Positions 1-7,657 of a DNA stretch of 7,657 nt are shown in pieces (positions within the stretch are counted from its first letter, which is position 1; every line of letters starts with the position of its first letter). Made by a program: the position numbers and the translations under genes. Source of the DNA: Trichoplax adhaerens (Eukaryota > Animalia > Placozoa); the NCBI RefSeq assembly GCF_000150275.1, contig NW_002060946.1:6606804-6614460 (forward strand), written 5' to 3'. The notes under the pieces were generated by a model, which was not told the DNA's origin, did no database searches, and saw nothing but the letters and a program-made list of their open reading frames with translations.

Positions 1-79
1 GAATTCTTATTTTCATAGCTTAATCTGCCAGCATAGAAGAAATTACAACAATTCTAACAAATTAAACTGTTTTCATTCA

Positions 80-99
80 ATATATATATATATATATAT
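80..99 (+). repeat. (AT)10 microsatellite before the 5'-UTR intron acceptor
   Basis: Direct read; (AT)13 in copy 2. Confidence 0.95.
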
Positions 100-114
100 G
101 TAGAAACTGACAAC

Positions 115-680
115 ATGAAGTTCACGTTGGTCTTACTTGCCTCACTTCTCTTCTTGGCCGTCGCTGTACGTGCCGAGGAAGAACAACCTACAACTATCGA
201 AGAAGTTAAAGATCAAGCCCCAGCAGAAAATGAAGAGGGCGAGGTAGCTGAAAAAGAAGAAGACGAGATCGAATCTCCTGAGAATGAATTACAAGATAGA
301 GAAGCAGATGAAGAAGAAGAAGAAGTACCTGAAGAAGCTAAAGCAGCCTTCGTAAGTTATTGATAAACTCTTCATTTTGTCTTCAATGTTGTACCTTATG
401 AAGACTATTCTGTCAATTACCTCTAGATGATAAATAATGTCAATAGTATACTCCAGTAAACTTCAAATAAGGTGCTTCTTAAATTTCTCACTTCGAAATA
501 TCATCATTTTAACAGTGGAGACGCCGTCGCCGTCGTCGTCGTCGCTTCTACTACCGTCGTCGCTTCTTCTACCGTCGTCGCTTCTTCTACCGTCGCCGCT
601 ACTGGTACCGCCGTCGCTTCTACTACCGTCGTCGCTTGTCCTTCAGCCGCCGCCGATTCGGAAAGAGTGCCGAAAACTAA
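115..680 (+). CDS. Spliced CDS join(115..351,516..680), 133-aa secreted prepropeptide (copy 1): signal peptide + acidic propiece + Arg/aromatic-rich putative antimicrobial peptide
   Basis: ATG in ACAACATG context. Hydrophobic signal MKFTLVLLASLLFLAVAVRA, then a 59-aa propiece with 28 D/E. Donor TTC|GTAAGT at 352 and acceptor TTTTAACAG|TGG at 515 join in phase 0. The downstream exon reads WRRRRRRRRRFYYRRRFFYRRRFFYRRRYWYRRRFYYRRRLSFSRRRFGKSAEN* (TAA 678-680). The same structure is conserved in copy 2. Confidence 0.88.
352..515 (+). other. Phase-0 GT-AG intron (164 nt) separating the prepro exon from the mature-peptide exon, copy 1
   Basis: Consensus GTAAGT donor, pyrimidine-rich CATTTTAACAG acceptor, AT-rich interior, and an in-frame stop just after the donor if unspliced. 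Confidence 0.88.
537..659 (+). repeat. Coding 18-bp minisatellite (consensus CGTCGTCGCTTCTACTAC = RRRFYY), copy 1
   Basis: About 6.5 tandem units, preceded by further CGY codons. Confidence 0.92.
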
Positions 681-855
681 GCAACTTCTTCAATAGAAAG
701 GATAAGACAACTTGTAAACTTTAGTGACTGAAGATAAACACAATAGTGATTCGTAGAAATTACAATATAAAATGTAGTAGAACAGAGAATAGCATTATCT
801 TTAAACTTGATGTAAATTGTCATTATCCTTGATTGGCAACTATTTTTACAACAGT

Positions 856-861
856 AATAAA
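856..861 (+). terminator. Polyadenylation signal, copy 1
   Basis: First AATAAA after the stop, 175 nt downstream, conserved in copy 2. Confidence 0.55.
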
Positions 862-1177
862 ACTCTAATTGAAAACATCTATTTGGTATAAATTACCATT
901 GCAATCTATTGTTGATGTAAGTAACAGGCCAAAATACCAATCACCAGACGATAGTACACTGTAGAATTTTTCATCAAATCATTCTAAATAGACTGCATGT
1001 AAATCGGCTAAATACGCTTATTTTCCCTTTTCAATCATAATCTATCGAAATATAAACGCAATCAGTTTACTTTACAAATAAAAATATATAAGATAGCTAG
1101 TTCCCTTAGCTACAATCTCTTTTCGAGATTTCCAGTGATGCATAACCAAAAATCGTATACTGTTACTACAAGTACAC

Positions 1178-1335
1178 AATCGAGTAACCTAAGATTTGAT
1201 TCAATACAAGTAGAGCAGTTCCCTTATGTTGAGACGATAGTAATGATATCGGAAGTAACTTTAAAATTTGATTCAATGCAAATAAAGTAGTTTCTGTATG
1301 TGATGCAGCAATATTAAAATCGAAAGTAACTTTAA
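1178..1335 (+). repeat. Degenerate ~71-bp tandem repeat (about 2.2 units) in the 3' flank
   Basis: AGTAAC recurs at 1183, 1254 and 1325. The first two are followed by ATTTGATTCAAT. Also present in copy 2 from about 7540. Confidence 0.75.
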
Positions 1336-2871
1336 TGCAGGCCTGTTTATTTATACGTCCGCCAAAGAAAAGAAAAACTGTCCAAACAATTTAGAGAAAT
1401 AGGATAATGGTGCTTAGTCTTGTAATTTTGGGAAAGTCGATTCATGTTCTTGTATTAGCCTACTATATTCCTATACTTTAGGGCAAATACATTACTTTAA
1501 CACCTCAAAAACTTGATTTTCCATCTATCAGGGTAAAACACACATTACGTTCTATCTCATACCTTTTAAATCCACTTTTGTAAATATCCATACCTTCACC
1601 TTAACCCTTAACTCTTAGCTAAGGCTTATGCAACACAGAGTACCATATACATATAAACTGTAAAGGATTTGAATTACGTACTAGTCTTTCTTTTAGATGC
1701 GATTTAGCTGCGTAGATACACACTTAAACTACACATCAGATGTGTAAAAGAATATTCTGAGTCAAATAGTGTTACACTAGGTATTATCGATATACTACCA
1801 AAGCACATAACTACTAATAACTAGGTACAATTATTACATTTCCTGAACAGCAAAGATAATAGAAGAGTTCAGTAGAGCTTGAGTACGATGTTCAAATTTA
1901 TTAATGATATATTACTATCTTTCGAAGAGGAAAATGATGACAGTAAAGTTGTAAATCCGTATACCATAATTATTATCGCGCTGTGCATCATCCATGTAAT
2001 ATTATTACAGAGTCAACGGTGACAAGATATGGTAAAAGCTGTTGTAATTCTTTTACAATCTATACTATATTATCGATATTAGTGGACTTAAACTAAAGCA
2101 GGCGATCTCAAATTAAATATTAAGTAATCGTATAAATGATATGATACGTGCACGATTCTCATAGGCTTTTAATCATTTCAAACATCTAAACTTCCGTAGC
2201 TTTAGGATGTAGTCTTACGGATAGTGAACAATAACTGCAAATACTGTACTATATTCACACCTAAGAGATAGACTTCGCAATGGTTGTCACAGTATGTGCT
2301 TACAATATACTTCATCTTATCGCACCTTAATTAAATCTAATGGCTAATTGCAAGTTTACAAGTATCAATTAATAAACAAGGCGACTATAGAGAGATTTCA
2401 AACCTCATTACAAGATCAATCTCTCTTATAATAAGATCTAATAGTGTATGCAGAATAAAGTATCGTTACTGAAAGGTTATTACGGCTGCATAGGATATCA
2501 CTAATACAAACTCCCGTCGCTTTGCTGACGGTTTACGATAATGTACCCGTTTGTTAACAATGAACAGATAGTATTACCACTCGACATATAGCAATCAGAA
2601 ATAACCGGGACAGGGGAACTACAGTAGGGTAAGACTACGAATTGCATGAGAGCAATAGAACTAATAGTACCTACTGATGTGTATCAATCACTTATACCTT
2701 CTCAATAATATTTACATAAACCCTACAGATCATTCATTTCAATACGAATTCCGTTTTCGTTAACATAGCATTAATACTGTATATATTGTAACCATCCTTA
2801 TTCGGTAAACATACTACTGTAATACGAAAGTTACTTAAGGTTGGTAAGCGAAACTGTCAAAATATACGTTA

Positions 2872-3112
2872 ATGCTATATTAACATTTGTTCACGGTACA
2901 AAGCACAGTATGATAACTAATGTACGGTGATGGACATGCCAAGTTAACATTAGTAGGTACTGTAAGATATTTAAGATTAGTTCATGGTACGAAGCACAGC
3001 ATGATAAGTAATGGACTATGCTATATTAAGATTAGTTAATGGTCCAAAGTGTACATTATGATAACCAATGTACGGTGATGGACATACCAAGTTAAGATTA
3101 GCAGGTACTGTA
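2872..3112 (+). repeat. Compound tandem repeat A-B-A-A-B
   Basis: 2872..2964 matches 3018..3112 (ATGCTATATTAA...AATGTACGGTGATGGACAT...AGGTACTGTA). An extra A-type unit lies between them (about 2965..3017). Confidence 0.88.
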
Positions 3113-3464
3113 CAATGTCCTTAGTACTGTAGTCAATTCTATGCCAATCTTTGTAACGTGTCTAAGGATCGCTTGCATATGCAAGCAAAGCTTGCTCTGT
3201 CGATAAAAACCGTTGTGTAGAAAACTCTATAAAGATTCTATGTTTATTCAATTTTCATCAGAGTATTACATCAAATCAAAACTGAAAGGTCCAGTGGCCA
3301 CCCTTAGCGATATAACGAATACTATTTTAAAAATCAGTACTCTGCAGGAATTGCTATGTTAGAGCTATTCGTATTATATGAAGAAATCTTGAGGTAAAAA
3401 GTACTGTAAGAATCTTATATTGACCTATTGAAATGAACCCATAATCAAAGTCATCTAATAGTAG

Positions 3465-3649
3465 TATAAATACCCCGCGCAGCTCGTTTGAAGGTGGTGG
3501 GTGAGTGGAATTACCTAAGTACTTCTATGATCATCAATTATTTATTATAAAGGCATGATTATAAATACCCCGCGCAGCTCGTTTAAAGGGTGGGTGAGTG
3601 GAATTACCTAAGTACTTCTATGATCATCAATTATTATTATAAAGGCATG
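3465..3649 (+). repeat. Near-perfect tandem duplication, 95-bp period
   Basis: 3465..3557 and 3560..3649 both read TATAAATACCCCGCGCAGCTCGTTT...TATAAAGGCATG, differing by about one substitution and two small indels. Confidence 0.95.
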
Positions 3650-4399
3650 TCACCAAACACTTTAATGCATACTTAAGTGTTGATAACGTTGTATTTTCTT
3701 AACAAGAGTACCTTATCCATTTGAGCTATGCGCACATTTATTATGATCTACTGTATTGCCTCTATTACTTCGACGTAAGTAAGTATCATAATAAAAGTGC
3801 AACCATATTTGATTCAGTATTTTACTTGCTAATAATTAAAGGTATTGGAAGATGTAGGTGTAAGCTATTACGATTAAGATTCACTTTTAATTAGATTCGT
3901 CCTAATGTACAACAATATTTAGCTTATACTGTAGGTCTAACTAACAGTGTTGAAAGCTTAATTTACGTCAGATAGACTTCAGTTAGTCTAACTCTTCGAA
4001 TCTTTAATGAGCTAATAATCACAATATCATTTCCATTCCATCAAATATACTGATGCTGGACGATAATGACACTTGAATTTGGTGTCGTAAGAAATTAAGT
4101 ATTGGTAACTTATAAAACTGTCTACTTGTAGCTAGTAGAGTTATATTCGTGAATAACATTCCGTATTATTCATAAGAACTTCAGTTATATAATATTTGAT
4201 TCAAATTTACATTTAATCATATCATTTTATGCTATACCTAAATATCTATGATCAAGTGTTTGCTTTTTTGGTTAAAGCAAAGATTATATTAATGTAACAG
4301 CTTAAAATATCATATGACTATCCATATAAGATTTCAAAACTTAAGTAAGTCATCTTACAAGCTTGTATTATACCGTAGCTTATCATTTAGAGAGAACAA

Positions 4400-5364
4400 C
4401 ATTGTCCTTATCCTTTTATCGTGCTTTCCTTCGCAAATGCGAGAATCGAAATAGAGACCAGTTTACTAGCAGCATCGTATCAACTATACTATACAACCTC
4501 CACTCTCACTTGGCTAATGAAGATTTGAAAAGTTTCTCTCACTACTACTTCCTTCCCGTCATTTTATATAGTAATAATCGAGCCTATAACCCCTGGTTAC
4601 CAGATACTTATAATTCTTGAGGCACATAATATGCTATGCCTTTAACAATATTTGCGGTACTAGCATTTATTCTTTCATTGTCCATGACTGAAACAAGAAT
4701 CACTAGATAATAATCCATAAAATAACTAATTTCCTAGCCAATTCGACTGTTGTATCCCGTCGCCCTTGACAATAACAACTGATGTTTACCATTAACGATA
4801 GTAACATCCCTATTTCATTTCTGCCAGGCCTACAAAATATTCTGTGAAGTAGAAATCGTGATTCTTTAAAATCAATTTTCATAATAAGATAACCTGGCAG
4901 CAATGTACAAGTGATTGACTGTGTAAATATCTATAGATATATCTCTTACCTATCTGCAAATAAATGCCCAACAATTCTGTAAATGAAATGATGCTTGGAG
5001 TGACATTTAATCTTTAAAAATAAAAATAGTAACAACTACTCTTTGAATATCATAATAGCGTAGCGACCTTGATTTCTTTCAGTTCCTTCATAAATTACAA
5101 TTATTCAGACATTCTTGACTTTTATGAATTTAGATCATTTATTCACAGCCAATAAAATTCCAGCCTCTTCCGTCTGACTATCTCCTATTGTGAAAGTCTC
5201 GATAATAAAAATCTTCAAAAAGATTTATTAATTATGAGAGTATGCTAGTCTGGGACAACTATTGTAGATATTCATTGAATTAATCAGACAAGTAGAACTT
5301 CGCAAGGAATGATGCCTTAAGTGGCCAATCTTTATTTTTTATTCAGCTTGTTAATAGCTACATA
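4400..5364 (-). pseudogene. Possible highly decayed protein kinase pseudogene (IRAK/Pelle- or TKL-like)
   Basis: Minus-strand fragments fall in kinase subdomain order across several frames with stops: YVAINKL (5364-5344), SFLAK (5312-5298), HDF/TSQNIL (4860-4833), GLAE (4830-4819), TANIVKGIAYYVPQEL* (4658-4608), RLDYY (4585-4571), MTGRK (4562-4548), CEGKHDKRIRTM (4435-4400). Recognised by eye only. Confidence 0.4.
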
Positions 5365-6227
5365 ACAATATGGAGTAAGCAATCTTCTATTGTTAAAGAA
5401 TAATAACATCCATAACAAATTCTAGTGAATTCACAATGAGGAAATCATGTAATCAACCGCCAATGGTTTAATAAATATACAATTGTTATTAGCATTTCCC
5501 CATCCTTTATCTACTTATATCTTATTATCTAGCGCTACTATTAATAATGCTAATGTAGCATGTTCATTAGCATCCATAGTTATTAGAAGAACAATTCACG
5601 TACAGTACGGTAGCATTGTAAATATACTTATTATATCTACTACTTAACAGTCTTCTAAACGAACATAGCAACAAGTTATTTATTCCTCTAGTCCAAATGG
5701 TTCAGATGTTAGAAACGCAACATTGCCAATGAAAAACTGTGCAATCATCGGATAAATAAAAGAAAACCATCTCTATTGTGTCTTTTCACCCACAAATACT
5801 ATTACACTGCATACGATTACGTATCGAAAATAACCTACTTCTATGTAATTTTACTGTTTCTGTACCTATATGAATAAAATAGATTAAATATAAGTTACAG
5901 TGTTGAAAATGGTATATTAACTGTATAGAATATAACAAGATTTTAAACTGACCAATTCAAATCGCTATACGGGAATATTGCTTTCCAAAATTTGGTAACA
6001 TCTTCTACAGATAATTTTATATACTACTCGTAGATGTTGAAGTCATGGTTAGCCAGTAAGTAATAATTAAATAATGTAAATTTAAATTCTTTGTCGCCTC
6101 TATTATCCCAAAATAACAAAAGACATCAAGCTCTTGCTGCACAACTACTGGAAATTAATTCGAGTTTCCCATTTTGCGTATTCAATTTAAGATCCTCCTT
6201 CTTCAGTATTTATTATCTGCACGAGTG

Positions 6228-6270
6228 TATATAAAGGTCTAACATTCTCACATTTCCTTAGAACTCATTG
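6228..6270 (+). promoter_or_regulatory. Core promoter of copy 2: TATA box with likely transcription start near 6260-6267
   Basis: TATATAAAG at 6228-6236 and initiator-like TCATT at 6265-6269, followed by a short non-coding exon and splice donor. Confidence 0.6.
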
Positions 6271-6306
6271 CACACGCAAGGTGTATAGAGAAACTGTCTT
6301 GATACG

Positions 6307-6411
6307 GTAAGGAAACTATTTCAGCTTTATATCGAATTCTTATTTTCATAGCTCAATCTGCCAGCATAGAAGAAATTACAACAATTCTAACAAATTAAAC
6401 TGTTTTCATTC

Positions 6412-6442
<31 letters not shown>
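6307..6442 (+). other. Putative 5'-UTR intron (136 nt) of copy 2; the copy 1 equivalent ends at 103 and begins before the window
   Basis: CG|GTAAGG donor at 6307, about 70 nt after the TATA box. TGTAG acceptor ends at 6442, 11 nt before the ATG. Confidence 0.6.
6413..6438 (+). repeat. (AT)13 microsatellite before the 5'-UTR intron acceptor
   Basis: Direct read. Confidence 0.95.
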
Positions 6443-6453
6443 AAACTGACAAC

Positions 6454-7034
6454 ATGAAGTTCACGTTGGTCTTACTTGCCTCACTTCTCTTCTTGGCCGT
6501 CGCTGTACGTGCCGAGGAAGAACAACCTACAACTATCGAAGAAGTTAAAGATCAAGCCCCAGCAGAAAATGAAGAGGGCGAGGTAGCTGAAAAAGAAGAA
6601 GACGAGATCGAATCTCCTGAGAATGAATTACAAGATAGAGAAGCAGATGAAGAAGAAGAAGTACCTGAAGAAGCTAAAGCAGCCTTCGTAAGTTATTGAT
6701 AAACTCTTTATTTTGTCTTCAATGTTGTACCTTATGAAGACTATTCTGTTAATGACTACTAGATGATAAATAATGTCAATAGTATACTCTAGTAAACTTA
6801 AAATAAGGTGCTTCTTAAATTTCTCACTTCGAAATATCATCATTTTAACAGTGGAGACGCCGTCGCCGTCGTCGTCGTCGCTTCGTCTACCGTCGTCGCT
6901 TCGTCTACCGTCGTCGCTTCTTCTACCGTCGTCGCTTCTACTACCGTCGTCGCTACTGGTACCGCCGTCGCTTCTATTACCGCCGTCGCTTCTACTACCG
7001 CCGCCGCCGATTCGGAAAGAGTGCCGAAAACTAA
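6454..7034 (+). CDS. Spliced CDS join(6454..6687,6852..7034), 138-aa secreted prepropeptide (copy 2): signal peptide + acidic propiece + Arg/aromatic-rich putative antimicrobial peptide
   Basis: First coding exon is identical to copy 1 except for one fewer GAA codon. Donor GTAAGT at 6688, acceptor AACAG ending 6851. The downstream exon reads WRRRRRRRRRFVYRRRFVYRRRFFYRRRFYYRRRYWYRRRFYYRRRFYYRRRRFGKSAEN* (TAA 7032-7034). Coding indels between copies (3 and 18 nt) preserve the frame. Confidence 0.88.
6688..6851 (+). other. Phase-0 GT-AG intron (164 nt), copy 2
   Basis: Same donor and acceptor as copy 1. I counted 7 substitutions versus 352..515, none in the splice sites. Confidence 0.88.
6873..7013 (+). 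repeat. Coding 18-bp minisatellite (RRR + aromatic triplet), copy 2
   Basis: One more unit than copy 1. Confidence 0.92.
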
Positions 7035-7209
7035 GCAACTTCTTCAATAGAAAGGATAAGACAACTTGTAAACTTTAGTGGCTGAAGATAGACACAATAG
7101 TGATTCGTAGAAATTACAATATAAAATGTAGCAGAACAGAGAGTAGCATTATTTTTAAACTTGATGTAAATTGTCATTATCCTTGATTGGCAACTATTTT
7201 TACAACAGT

Positions 7210-7215
7210 AATAAA
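7210..7215 (+). terminator. Polyadenylation signal, copy 2
   Basis: AATAAA 175 nt after the stop, the same position as in copy 1. Confidence 0.55.
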
Positions 7216-7657
7216 ACTCTAATTGAAAACATCTATTTGGTATAAATTACCATTGCAATCAATTTTTGATGTAAGTAACAGGCCAAAATACCAATCACCA
7301 GACGACAGTACACTGTAGAATTTTTTCATCAAATCATTCTAAATAGACGGCATGTAAAACGGCTAAGCACGCTTATTTTTTCTTTTCAATCATAATCTAT
7401 CGAAATATAAACGCAATCAGTTTACTTTACAAATAAAAAAATATATATATAAGATAACTGCTTACCTTGGCTTCAATCTCTTTTCGAGATTTCCAGTGAT
7501 GCATAACCAAAAATCGTATACTGTTACTACAAGTACACAATCGAGTAACCTAAGATTTGATTCAATGCAAGTAGACCAGTTAGTTCCCTTACGTTGAGAC
7601 GACAGCAATAACATCGGAAGTAACTTTAAAATTTGATTCAATGCAAATAAAGTAGCT

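What the first reader, a model, noticed from the sequence alone, without database searches (positions are those of the whole stretch)
115..7034. Hidden spliced gene pair encoding secreted poly-Arg/aromatic block peptides: candidate new antimicrobial or membrane-active peptide family
Seen: the ORF track shows only an acidic 82-aa ORF and wrong-frame repeats. Splicing at consensus sites gives signal peptide + acidic propiece + W-R9-(FYY/FFY/YWY/FVY-RRR)n-F-GK-SAEN. From W to the last F, copy 1 has 27 Arg and 18 aromatic residues in 48 aa. Copy 2 has 31 Arg and 21 aromatic in 54 aa. Neither has Cys, Pro or acidic residues there. Established: signal + anionic propiece + cationic amidated C-terminal peptide is the architecture of Hydra arminins and many amphibian skin AMP precursors. 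Inference: this is a host-defence or prey-lysing peptide of a small invertebrate (composition and short introns would fit a placozoan-like genome). I do not recognise the mature sequence as a named family.
Basis: partly seen in the sequence, partly recalled or inferred. Interest (0 to 1): 0.92.

Follow-up and report, generated by a model that had tools for sequence, protein, structure and literature searches.

The report
Unannotated placozoan poly-arginine secreted peptide genes
Two tandem, unannotated Trichoplax genes splice a signal peptide and acidic pro-region onto an extremely arginine- and aromatic-rich, probably amidated peptide. They are new members of a large placozoan family, one member of which (AMP3) was proposed in 2025 as an antimicrobial peptide.

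Summary
Both copies read exactly as described: exon 1 (signal peptide plus acidic pro-region), a GTAAGT donor, a TTTTAACAG acceptor, and exon 2 starting W-R9 with (aromatic triplet-RRR)n and ending F-G-K-SAEN-stop. The window is Trichoplax adhaerens H1, inside an array of seven paralogs. All paralogs keep a phase-0 donor and an acceptor in the Arg frame. Two Trichoplax H2 gene models use that splice. Other placozoan contigs keep the architecture. In one orthologous pair, 13 of 19 exon-2 differences fall at third codon positions of the Arg frame.

It is not a new family. An exon-1 profile finds TRIADDRAFT_60631, the "AMP3" arminin-like putative antimicrobial peptide of Mayorova et al. 2025, which has the same two-exon structure and a WW-R9 start. 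At least 25 such loci exist, mostly unannotated or modelled in the wrong frame.

Function is untested. A secreted cationic defence or lytic peptide kept inactive by its acidic pro-piece is most likely. The predicted C-terminal Arg-Phe-amide offers a testable candidate for Trichoplax's unexplained RFamide immunoreactivity. The scan had already noted this family elsewhere in the genome.

The parts
1..1290 (+). Duplicated segment, copy 1 (gene plus flanks)
   Evidence: Aligns with 6335-7657 at 96% mean column identity.
115..174 (+). Copy 1 signal peptide (20 aa: MK, a hydrophobic core, then V-R-A before the predicted cut)
   Evidence: Translation. The cut site is judged by inspection (small residues at -3 and -1); no SignalP run was available.
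175..351 (+). Copy 1 acidic pro-region (59 aa, 28 Asp+Glu, 4 Lys+Arg); end of exon 1
   Evidence: Homologous to the pro-regions of paralogs and of AMP3.
352..515 (+). Copy 1 intron (164 nt, gtaagt...ttttaacag, phase 0)
   Evidence: Carries 7 substitutions against copy 2, whereas exon 1 carries none. It contains the other acceptor (AG at 425-426) that the H2 model TrispH2_011546 uses.
516..659 (+). Copy 1 predicted mature peptide: W-R9, then aromatic triplets alternating with RRR, ending RRR-F (48 aa, net +27)
   Evidence: The 18-nt repeat array lies at 537-637.
660..680 (+). Copy 1 Gly-Lys amidation/cleavage signal (660-665), SAEN tail (666-677) and stop (678-680)
   Evidence: A Gly-basic signal is conserved at this place in most paralogs.
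856..861 (+). Copy 1 AATAAA, the likely poly(A) signal, about 175 nt after the stop
   Evidence: Read from the sequence. The same AATAAAACT lies at the equivalent place in paralogs p1, p6 and p7.
6335..7657 (+). Duplicated segment, copy 2 (runs to the end of the window)
6454..6687 (+). Copy 2 exon 1: signal peptide 6454-6513 and acidic pro-region 6514-6687 (one Glu codon fewer than copy 1)
6688..6851 (+). Copy 2 intron (164 nt, phase 0)
6852..7013 (+). Copy 2 predicted mature peptide (54 aa, net +31; one more 18-nt unit than copy 1)
7014..7034 (+). Copy 2 Gly-Lys signal, SAEN tail and stop
7210..7215 (+). Copy 2 AATAAA
   Evidence: Read from the sequence.

Best explanation
The window holds two intact, tandemly duplicated, two-exon protein-coding genes of Trichoplax adhaerens. 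They belong to a large placozoan-specific family that includes the published arminin-like putative antimicrobial peptide AMP3 (TRIADDRAFT_60631).

Exon 1 encodes a signal peptide and a strongly acidic pro-region. A phase-0 intron joins it to exon 2, which encodes a Trp-led poly-arginine peptide. In this subfamily an 18-nt unit has expanded that peptide into alternating Arg triplets and aromatic triplets.

The inferred route is as follows. The precursor enters the secretory pathway. The acidic pro-piece masks the polycation until it is removed. Cleavage after the Lys of F-G-K (Arg at P4 and P6), carboxypeptidase trimming and peptidylglycine amidating monooxygenase then leave a C-terminal Arg-Phe-amide.

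The intact cationic/aromatic peptide is the active product. It most likely binds anionic membranes or polyanions of microbes or prey, in defence or in external digestion. It would act as a block polycation rather than as an amphipathic helix.

What is shown: the sequence features, the family membership, and conservation of the frame and architecture. What is inferred: transcription and splicing of these two copies, the processing steps, and the activity.
For: Sequence and splice sites.

All seven paralogs of the local array and the dispersed loci keep a phase-0 GT donor and an AG acceptor immediately before W/WW/KSW-polyArg in the Arg frame.

The evidence-based H2 model TrispH2_011548 (sequence) uses exactly this splice and frame. 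A second H2 model, a 141-residue gene called at the p5 ortholog, matches it in span and length: 74 + 67 aa over 898 nt.

The H2 ortholog of the window gene keeps an open Arg frame with a different number of 18-nt units.

Between the two window copies, exon 1 has 0/234 substitutions against 35/887 in non-coding sequence (p = 4e-4). Every Arg codon in exon 2 is kept, while the aromatic positions change.

In the orthologous pair L071/L064, the exon-2 differences fall 4/2/13 by codon position in the Arg frame. That peptide is 25/29 identical, while the pro-piece is 11/50 identical.

Codon use in the Arg frame is TTC 16/16, TAC 18/19 and CGY 54/58. This leans the same way as actin and away from kinase genes.

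Homology to AMP3: profile E 7.5e-7 in the exhaustive search and 7e-10 within the genome, with the same two-exon structure.

[quoted passage not shown] It is described there as arminin-like with an amidation signal (PMC12013895).
Against: No RNA evidence exists for these two copies.

All three forward frames are open across the repeat.

The ids 011546 and 011548, 63910 and the Arg-rich motifs searched are absent from the supplements of the 2023 placozoan cell-atlas and peptidomics paper that are held as text.

Two neighbouring paralogs are broken (p2 and p7), so decay does occur in the array.

The peptide has no amphipathic helix or strand signature; its hydrophobic moment peaks only at period 6. 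A classical pore-forming mechanism is therefore unlikely.

Runs of Arg are also convertase sites, so the intact peptide might not survive processing.

No member of the family has had any activity measured.
Confidence: 0.6

Rival explanations
1. The products are signalling peptides or RFamide-epitope carriers rather than antimicrobials. Under this reading, the family members that end in R-F-G-K(K) are secreted by gland-type cells near the rim. They act on receptors or ion channels, and they are what RFamide/FMRFamide antisera stain in Trichoplax.
For: Seven matches to a degenerate DNA pattern for RRRFGK were found. Six lie in family loci; the seventh (C1375, L019) has no poly-Arg context. One of the six encodes a short W-RRRR-F followed by G-K-K. 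The literature states that no RFamide-like prepropeptide has been found in Trichoplax, although RFamide-reactive cells exist in a narrow zone near the edge (PMC6737977). A 2022 review lists 12 placozoan preprohormones; none of those it describes is an RFamide.
Against: The C-terminus is not conserved across the family: it varies among FW, WW, FS and YY before the Gly, and some members lack Gly. A peptide of 48-54 residues with +27 to +31 charge is unlike any known receptor ligand. FMRFamide staining has been attributed to cross-reaction with the endomorphin-like peptide. The cells expressing the window genes are unknown.
Confidence: 0.15
2. The Arg/aromatic peptides are structural polycations. 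They could serve as adhesive or coacervate-forming material, or as granule-packing counter-ions for acidic cargo in ventral epithelial secretory granules. In this they would resemble Arg/Tyr-rich mussel and tube-worm cement proteins.
For: Alternating Arg and aromatic blocks with a period of 6 and no amphipathic signature are the composition expected for cation-pi driven condensation (my own knowledge, not tested). AMP3 is reported from peripheral ventral epithelial cells, which have darker and more numerous granules than the central cells. The precursor carries its own polyanion in near-equal charge.
Against: Many family members are very short (8-30 residues) and carry a single Arg run, which suits a diffusible peptide better than a material. 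Exon 2 diverges quickly between recent duplicates, as is usual for defence peptides. There is no evidence for Tyr modification enzymes acting here.
Confidence: 0.1
3. Each RRR is a convertase site, and the gene is a multi-copy precursor releasing aromatic di- to tetrapeptides (FYY, FFY, YWY and similar) as the bioactive products.
For: Repeated short units separated by multi-basic sites are the classic layout of a neuropeptide precursor. Trichoplax uses many very short peptides (PMC9545775).
Against: The inner units lack Gly and any N- or C-terminal protection. Their length (2-5 residues) and sequence vary freely between paralogs, while the Arg runs are the conserved part. Short family members would yield only single residues. 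In the orthologous pair L071/L064 the whole exon-2 peptide, including its 10-Arg run, is conserved (25/29 identical).
Confidence: 0.07
4. The Arg frame of these two copies is not translated. Transcripts either use the acceptor at 426/427, giving an 88-aa acidic secreted protein with the repeat in the 3' UTR, or the copies are silent young pseudogenes.
For: The H2 Maker model TrispH2_011546 is built this way. All three frames are open. Neighbours p2 and p7 are broken.
Against: The frame and phase are conserved at about 25 loci and across species. Third-position bias falls in the Arg frame. The W start and the Gly-basic end are conserved. All indels between H1 copy 1, H1 copy 2 and the H2 ortholog are whole 18-nt units. 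Codon use in the Arg frame resembles that of actin, taken here as a highly expressed reference.
Confidence: 0.08

Closest known systems
Trichoplax AMP3 (TRIADDRAFT_60631), an arminin-like putative antimicrobial prepropeptide (Mayorova et al. 2025, PMC12013895)
   Same: The signal peptide and acidic pro-region are homologous. The gene has two exons with a phase-0 intron directly before a Trp-led run of nine or more Arg. It carries a C-terminal Gly-basic amidation signal.
   Different: AMP3 has a single Arg run followed by a unique tail that ends YY-G-R. The window genes carry an expanded 18-nt repeat that gives alternating aromatic and Arg triplets, and they end RRR-F-G-K. Pairwise identity is low (45-46% over the aligned 68-70 residues, with E-values of only 0.04 to 1.5 for the two window copies). 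AMP3 expression is documented; expression of the window genes is not.
Hydra arminins
   Same: The layout is the same: signal peptide, anionic N-terminal region, cationic C-terminal peptide with a Gly-basic end. This is as described in PMC12013895.
   Different: No sequence relationship was detected: the exhaustive profile search returned 10 hits, and none of them was a recognisable arminin. Arminins are Lys/Arg-rich with aliphatic residues, not poly-Arg/aromatic repeats (from the literature and memory). The resemblance is one of working principle, not shown ancestry.
Mammalian alpha-defensin precursors (Pfam PF00879, Defensin_propep)
   Same: A signal peptide and anionic pro-piece balance a cationic mature peptide. 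Exon 1 scores 23.7 bits against a cut-off of 23.6. A defensin precursor appeared as a weak hit of the profile (P0011).
   Different: There is no cysteine-rich defensin domain. The hit covers the signal peptide and the first acidic stretch, so it is most likely compositional.
Trp/Arg-rich antimicrobial and cell-penetrating peptides (indolicidin, tritrpticin, lactoferricin-derived and synthetic RW-amide hexapeptides, nona-arginine) and protamines
   Same: The composition is similar: Arg clusters with Trp/Phe/Tyr and C-terminal amidation. Protamines share the spacing of Arg clusters separated by 2-4 neutral residues. This comparison rests on my own knowledge and was not tested.
   Different: None of these is encoded as a secreted precursor with an acidic pro-piece and a repeat of this kind. 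Protamines are nuclear and have no signal peptide. No homology is claimed.
RFamide / FMRFamide-like neuropeptide precursors
   Same: The predicted C-terminal Arg-Phe-amide.
   Different: There is one amidation site per precursor, not many short Gly-flanked copies. The product is very long and highly charged. There is no sequence similarity to cnidarian or bilaterian RFamide precursors.

Membership tests
Trichoplax AMP3-type (Ta 60631) arminin-like prepropeptide family | N-terminal signal peptide followed by an acidic pro-region homologous to that of AMP3 | tested here: met
   A nine-sequence exon-1 profile hits TRIADDRAFT_60631 at E 7.5e-7 among 1.84 billion proteins and at 7e-10 within the genome. 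The reverse search with AMP3 finds the window copies only weakly (E 0.04 to 1.5).
Trichoplax AMP3-type (Ta 60631) arminin-like prepropeptide family | Two coding exons, with a phase-0 intron immediately before a Trp-led poly-Arg stretch | tested here: met
   AMP3 has exon 1 at C1399:1385681-1385899 and exon 2 at 1386144-1386236, beginning ag|TGGTGG. The window genes begin exon 2 with ag|TGGAGA.
Trichoplax AMP3-type (Ta 60631) arminin-like prepropeptide family | C-terminal Gly followed by a basic residue (amidation signal) | tested here: met
   F-G-K in both copies. G-K-K, G-K or G-R appears in most paralogs.
Trichoplax AMP3-type (Ta 60631) arminin-like prepropeptide family | High expression in peripheral ventral epithelial cells | not testable with these tools
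A search of the cell-atlas paper's supplements held as text for 011546, 011548 and 63910 found nothing.
Hydra arminins | Detectable sequence homology to arminin precursors | tested here: not met
   The exhaustive profile search gave 10 hits at E <= 0.001. They were annotated Trichoplax proteins, unnamed ENA and Logan proteins with the same prepro layout, and one defensin-like precursor. None was a recognisable arminin. I could not confirm independently that the library holds arminins.
Hydra arminins | Signal peptide, anionic N-terminal part and cationic C-terminal peptide ending in Gly-basic | tested here: met
   The description of arminins is taken from PMC12013895.
Hydra arminins | Demonstrated bactericidal activity of the C-terminal peptide | not testable with these tools
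   This needs synthesis and an assay.
RFamide / FMRFamide-like peptide precursors | Arg-Phe-Gly followed by a basic cleavage site | tested here: met
   R-R-R-F-G-K in both copies. Of seven matches to the degenerate RRRFGK pattern in the genome, six are family loci.
RFamide / FMRFamide-like peptide precursors | Short peptide copies (about 4-15 residues), each with its own Gly and flanking cleavage sites | tested here: not met
   There is one Gly per precursor, and the inner units have none.
Alpha-defensin precursors (PF00879 plus a defensin domain) | Six-cysteine defensin domain after the pro-piece | tested here: not met
   Exon 2 has no Cys. Only a borderline pro-peptide hit was found.
Protamines | Nuclear sperm protein without a signal peptide | tested here: not met
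   A canonical N-terminal signal peptide and acidic pro-piece are present.

The most novel reading that the evidence does not exclude
The family members that end in Arg-Phe-Gly-Lys are the two window genes, their neighbour p2, two dispersed long-repeat genes, and a short W-RRRR-F gene. These may be the long-sought source of RFamide-like immunoreactivity in Trichoplax. If so, the placozoan 'RFamide' first seen in 1993 would be an amidated poly-arginine secretory peptide of a defence-type family rather than a neuropeptide. The family of at least 25 mostly unannotated loci would then be a major hidden part of the placozoan secretome.
Probability: 0.2. Interest if true: 0.7.

Novelty: new member of a known kind. 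Interest (0 to 1): 0.5.

Why it matters
Placozoans digest food externally and have no neurons, so their secreted peptides carry much of their biology. This family is large, fast-evolving and almost invisible in public annotations. Gene finders pick the wrong frame across the CGN-rich repeat, or they stop at the intron (TRIADDRAFT_63910, TrispH2_010807, TrispH2_011546). Single-cell and peptidomic studies that rely on those models will therefore miss it.

Correct models would allow several things:
- Expression could be re-quantified in the existing cell atlases.
- The antimicrobial idea proposed for AMP3 could be tested with a natural series of W-polyArg peptides from 7 to 75 residues.
- One could ask whether natural nona- to trideca-arginine peptides act like the synthetic cell-penetrating and RW-type peptides they resemble.

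The predicted Arg-Phe-amide ends also give a concrete, cheap test for the 30-year-old question of what RFamide antisera recognise in Trichoplax.

Tried and rejected
- **Joined sequence.** Exons were searched separately by reference.
- I redid the analysis with peptides derived from the loci.
- **Rfam.** Nothing in the window.
- **Pfam.** Nothing for either exon-2 peptide, and only a borderline Defensin_propep hit for exon 1.
- **Protein atlas.** The search with AMP3 was uninformative: the model has pLDDT 0.55 and the fold hits look unrelated.
- **Literature.** The repeat motif is not in any held paper. The number 63910 gave only chance matches. The supplements of the 2023 cell-atlas paper and of Mayorova 2025 hold none of the ids or motifs I searched.
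- **Charge matching.** I tested charge matching between pro-piece and peptide as a family rule and rejected it (r = -0.15, p = 0.52, 21 loci).
- **Amphipathic structure.** An amphipathic helix or strand reading is rejected. The hydrophobic moment is 0.06-0.11 at 100 and 170 degrees against 0.51 at 60 degrees.
- **Membership of other families.** The arminin, alpha-defensin, protamine and RFamide-precursor families were each considered and not supported (see the membership test).

Full report
**1. What the sequence shows**

The six-frame ORF list shows only an acidic 82-aa ORF (115-363) and two repeat ORFs in other frames, and the same again near 6454-7078.

Translating window:115-351 gives a 20-residue signal peptide and a 59-residue pro-region with 28 Asp+Glu and 4 Lys+Arg. 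The next bases are GTAAGT. At 515/516 a TTTTAACAG acceptor is followed by TGG. Translating window:516-680 gives:
- W and nine Arg;
- five aromatic triplets and one LSFS unit, each followed by RRR;
- then F-G-K-SAEN and a stop.

Copy 2 (6454-6687 and 6852-7034) is the same with one Glu codon fewer and one 18-nt unit more. No Cys, Pro or acidic residue occurs in that stretch.

The repeat is an 18-nt tandem array. An AATAAA lies about 175 nt after each stop.

**2. Origin and neighbourhood**

The window is G000:C1411:6606804-6614460, in a genome of 105.6 Mb in 1414 contigs. A neighbouring paralog is annotated as TRIADDRAFT_63910 on a contig of the same length, 8,164,392 bp. The organism is therefore Trichoplax adhaerens H1.

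The two genes are numbers 3 and 4 of seven same-strand paralogs between 6,594,373 and 6,629,319.
- Paralogs 1, 5 and 6 are diverged but keep the same plan and end in FW-, WW- and FS-G-K-K.
- Paralog 2 is nearly identical to the window genes. A net 4-nt shortening just after the acceptor shifts its frame, unless an AG five bases downstream is used.
- Paralog 7 has an in-frame stop in exon 1 and has lost the Gly. The same defects occur in Trichoplax sp. H2, so it is an old pseudogene.

**3. Is the splice and frame real?**

I could not obtain RNA reads. The case therefore rests on comparison, and it is strong.

a. At every locus examined, the donor is phase 0 and an AG sits directly before the first codon of the Arg frame. 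This holds despite large differences in intron length (146-658 nt) and sequence.

b. Evidence-based Maker models of Trichoplax sp. H2 support the splice. TrispH2_011548, the paralog 6 ortholog, joins the exons exactly this way. A 141-residue gene called at the paralog 5 ortholog has the span and length expected for the same join; I did not read its product. That annotation used RNA-seq assemblies (PMC6057997).

c. The H2 ortholog of the window genes has an intact Arg frame with a different number of 18-nt units.

d. Between the two window copies, exon 1 has 0/234 substitutions against 35/887 in flanks and intron (Fisher p = 4e-4). Exon 2 has 10/165. Three are synonymous in the Arg frame, and the rest change aromatic or spacer residues. 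No Arg codon is lost.

e. Contigs from other placozoan-like genomes carry the same architecture (Logan SRR30664516, SRR30660616 and SRR30664517; ENA ERZ23499115). In the best-aligned orthologous pair (L071 and L064), the 19 exon-2 differences fall 4/2/13 by codon position in the Arg frame. The peptide is 25/29 identical, while the pro-piece is only 11/50 identical.

f. Read in the Arg frame, codon use is TTC 16/16, TAC 18/19 and CGT+CGC 54/58. Actin shows TTC 75% and CGT 68%. Sixteen kinase genes show TTC 32%.

Three points count against the model:
- The H2 model of the window ortholog (TrispH2_011546) uses the AG at 425-426 and ends after 88 residues.
- The JGI model TRIADDRAFT_63910 and the H2 model TrispH2_010807 read their repeats in another frame.
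- All three frames are open across the repeat.

I read these as gene-finder errors in a stop-free CGN-rich repeat. Only RNA can settle it for these two copies.

**4. The family**

The pattern for R-R-R-F-G-K and the exon-1 profile found further loci elsewhere in the genome with the same two-exon plan. A profile of nine exon-1 peptides (alignment A2) then found about 30 matches in the genome. At most of them, an exon starting W, WW, WS, WG, KWW or KSW followed by 4-13 Arg lies downstream in phase.

The predicted mature peptides range from 7-8 residues (W-RRRR-F before G-K-K) to 75 residues (eight LYY-RRR units). Alternation of 3-4 Arg with 2-5 hydrophobic or aromatic residues has arisen in several clusters with different spacers.

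The same profile, run exhaustively against 1.84 billion proteins, returned only ten hits. They comprise:
- the three annotated array proteins;
- two placozoan proteins from chromosome C1399 and its H2 counterpart;
- four unnamed ENA and Logan proteins;
- one mammalian alpha-defensin-like precursor.

One of the C1399 pair is TRIADDRAFT_60631, labelled "expressed protein". It reads signal peptide, acidic region, then WW-R9 and a short tail ending G-R. Its gene has the same phase-0 intron before WW.

Mayorova et al. 2025 (PMC12013895) name this gene AMP3, an arminin-like prepropeptide. [quoted passage not shown] They also report orthologs more than 55% identical in Hoilungia and Cladtertia.

The window genes are therefore unannotated paralogs of a published putative antimicrobial peptide, not a new family. 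In the literature I searched, I found no description of the family's size, the repeat subfamily or the mis-modelling.

Other readers of this scan had noted the same family on other pieces of this genome. One follow-up reported micro-exons seen in RNA in related genes. I did not test that.

**5. How it most likely works**

*Shown.* The sequence gives a canonical signal peptide, a pro-region of net -24 or -23, a peptide of net +27 or +31, and a Gly-Lys with Arg at P4 and P6.

*Inferred from the general rules of peptide processing.* The precursor enters the secretory pathway. It is cleaved after the Lys, trimmed by a carboxypeptidase, and amidated to a C-terminal Arg-Phe-amide. The pro-piece is removed near the exon junction. 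A Lys 2-5 residues before the junction is common in the family, but the N-terminal cut is unknown.

*Why the intact peptide is probably the product.* The conserved parts across paralogs and species are the leading Trp, the Arg runs and the Gly-basic end, whereas the spacers vary. The short members would make no sense if the Arg runs were cleaved.

*Physical character.* The hydrophobic moment peaks at 60 degrees per residue (0.51) and is negligible at helix and strand angles. The peptide is therefore a block polycation with aromatic stickers, not an amphipathic helix. Such a peptide should bind anionic lipids, lipopolysaccharide, nucleic acids or acidic polysaccharides. Together with the AMP3 context, this makes a defence or prey-disrupting role most likely.

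Charge neutralisation by the pro-piece is plausible for these copies. It is not scaled across the family (r = -0.15).

**6. Rivals**

- **RFamide reading.** No RFamide-like precursor is known in Trichoplax, although RFamide antisera label cells near the rim (PMC6737977; review PMC9545775). Six family loci end R-F-G-K. Against this, the C-terminus varies across the family and the expression sites are unknown.
- **Structural or adhesive coacervate role.** This fits the composition but has no direct support.
- **Multi-copy tripeptide precursor.** The missing Gly, the variable spacers and the conservation pattern argue against it.
- **Non-translation of the Arg frame.** The comparative evidence in section 3 argues against it.

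**7. Comparison with known systems**

The genes work like arminins and like alpha-defensin precursors: an anionic pro-piece masks a cationic peptide. Membership of those families is not supported. No recognisable arminin appears in the exhaustive search. The borderline Defensin_propep hit (23.7 bits against a 23.6 cut-off) covers the signal peptide and the first acidic stretch only, and no cysteine domain follows it. Membership of the Trichoplax AMP3-type family is supported on every feature I could test.

**8. Verdict**

These are new, distinctive members of a placozoan peptide family with one published member and no tested function.

Remaining value lies in three things:
- corrected gene models for a large hidden family;
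- a natural series of Trp/poly-Arg peptides;
- a testable candidate for the RFamide epitope.

Noticed in passing
G000:C1411:6602525-6603068 (L003/L041), upstream of the window: Paralog 2 is about 95% identical to the window genes, but its Arg run just after the acceptor is a net 4 nt shorter. Splicing at the usual AG therefore reads an Ala/Val/Ser/Thr frame. An AG five bases downstream would restore the Arg frame (T-R6...). It is either a young pseudogene or a shifted acceptor.
   Followed up: partly
G000:C1411:6628848-6629319 (L004/L056) and L029:14295-14790 (Trichoplax sp. H2): Paralog 7 has an in-frame TAG in exon 1, and its amidation Gly is replaced by Val. The same defects occur in H2, so the pseudogene predates the H1/H2 split. 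Its exon 2 still differs between the two lineages by a 21-nt indel.
   Followed up: yes
G000:C1411:7400896-7402300 (L045) and 7409523-7410900 (L047): One exon 1 is followed by two or three separate AG-preceded exons, each starting KSW or KWW plus an Arg run and ending G-K. These could be alternative last exons, or a more complex gene. Other scan notes report micro-exons in related genes.
   Followed up: no
window 60-114 and 6396-6453; alignment A4: All array paralogs share ...CAATT(T/C)TAAC.AATTAAA...TTAG|AAACTGACAAC directly before the ATG. The AG after a T-rich stretch could be the acceptor of a 5'-UTR intron, or it could be a conserved core promoter or leader. In the window copies a (TA)n microsatellite is inserted just upstream of it.
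   Followed up: partly
window 3465-3649: A 93-nt unit is duplicated in tandem at 95% identity. A ~75-nt stretch at window 3440-3515, overlapping the start of the first unit, is a dispersed repeat with at least 40 copies at 81-94% identity across the genome, probably the end of a small mobile element. There is no Rfam match.
   Followed up: partly
P0003 (TRIADDRAFT_63910), P0013 (TrispH2_010807), P0001 (TrispH2_011546): Public gene models of family members are wrong in different ways. Two read the repeat in a non-Arg frame through an upstream acceptor, and one stops inside the intron. No annotated protein matching the exon 1 of the dispersed loci I examined (L020, L021, L025) turned up in the exhaustive search.
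   Followed up: yes
L026:1364-1464 (ENA ERZ23499115 scaffold_38140): In this other placozoan-like contig, the Arg-frame peptide ends RRRRF and then TAG. It continues in frame with S-RRR-F-G-R and a stop. This could be a recent nonsense change or an assembly variant in a peptide that otherwise ends in the same R-F-G-basic signal.
   Followed up: no
window:115-351 (exon 1 peptide): There is a borderline Pfam hit to the mammalian alpha-defensin pro-peptide (PF00879, 23.7 bits against a 23.6 cut-off). Mayorova et al. report an 'alpha defensin' InterPro label on the N-terminus of a different Trichoplax putative AMP (Ta 55945). The hit is probably compositional convergence of signal plus anionic pro-pieces.
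   Followed up: partly
L001:1366-1401 (G000:C1411:6606768-6606803): The 36 bases immediately upstream of the window read N in the fetched locus, because of a gap or a withheld stretch. I could not determine how far the duplication extends upstream of copy 1.
   Followed up: no
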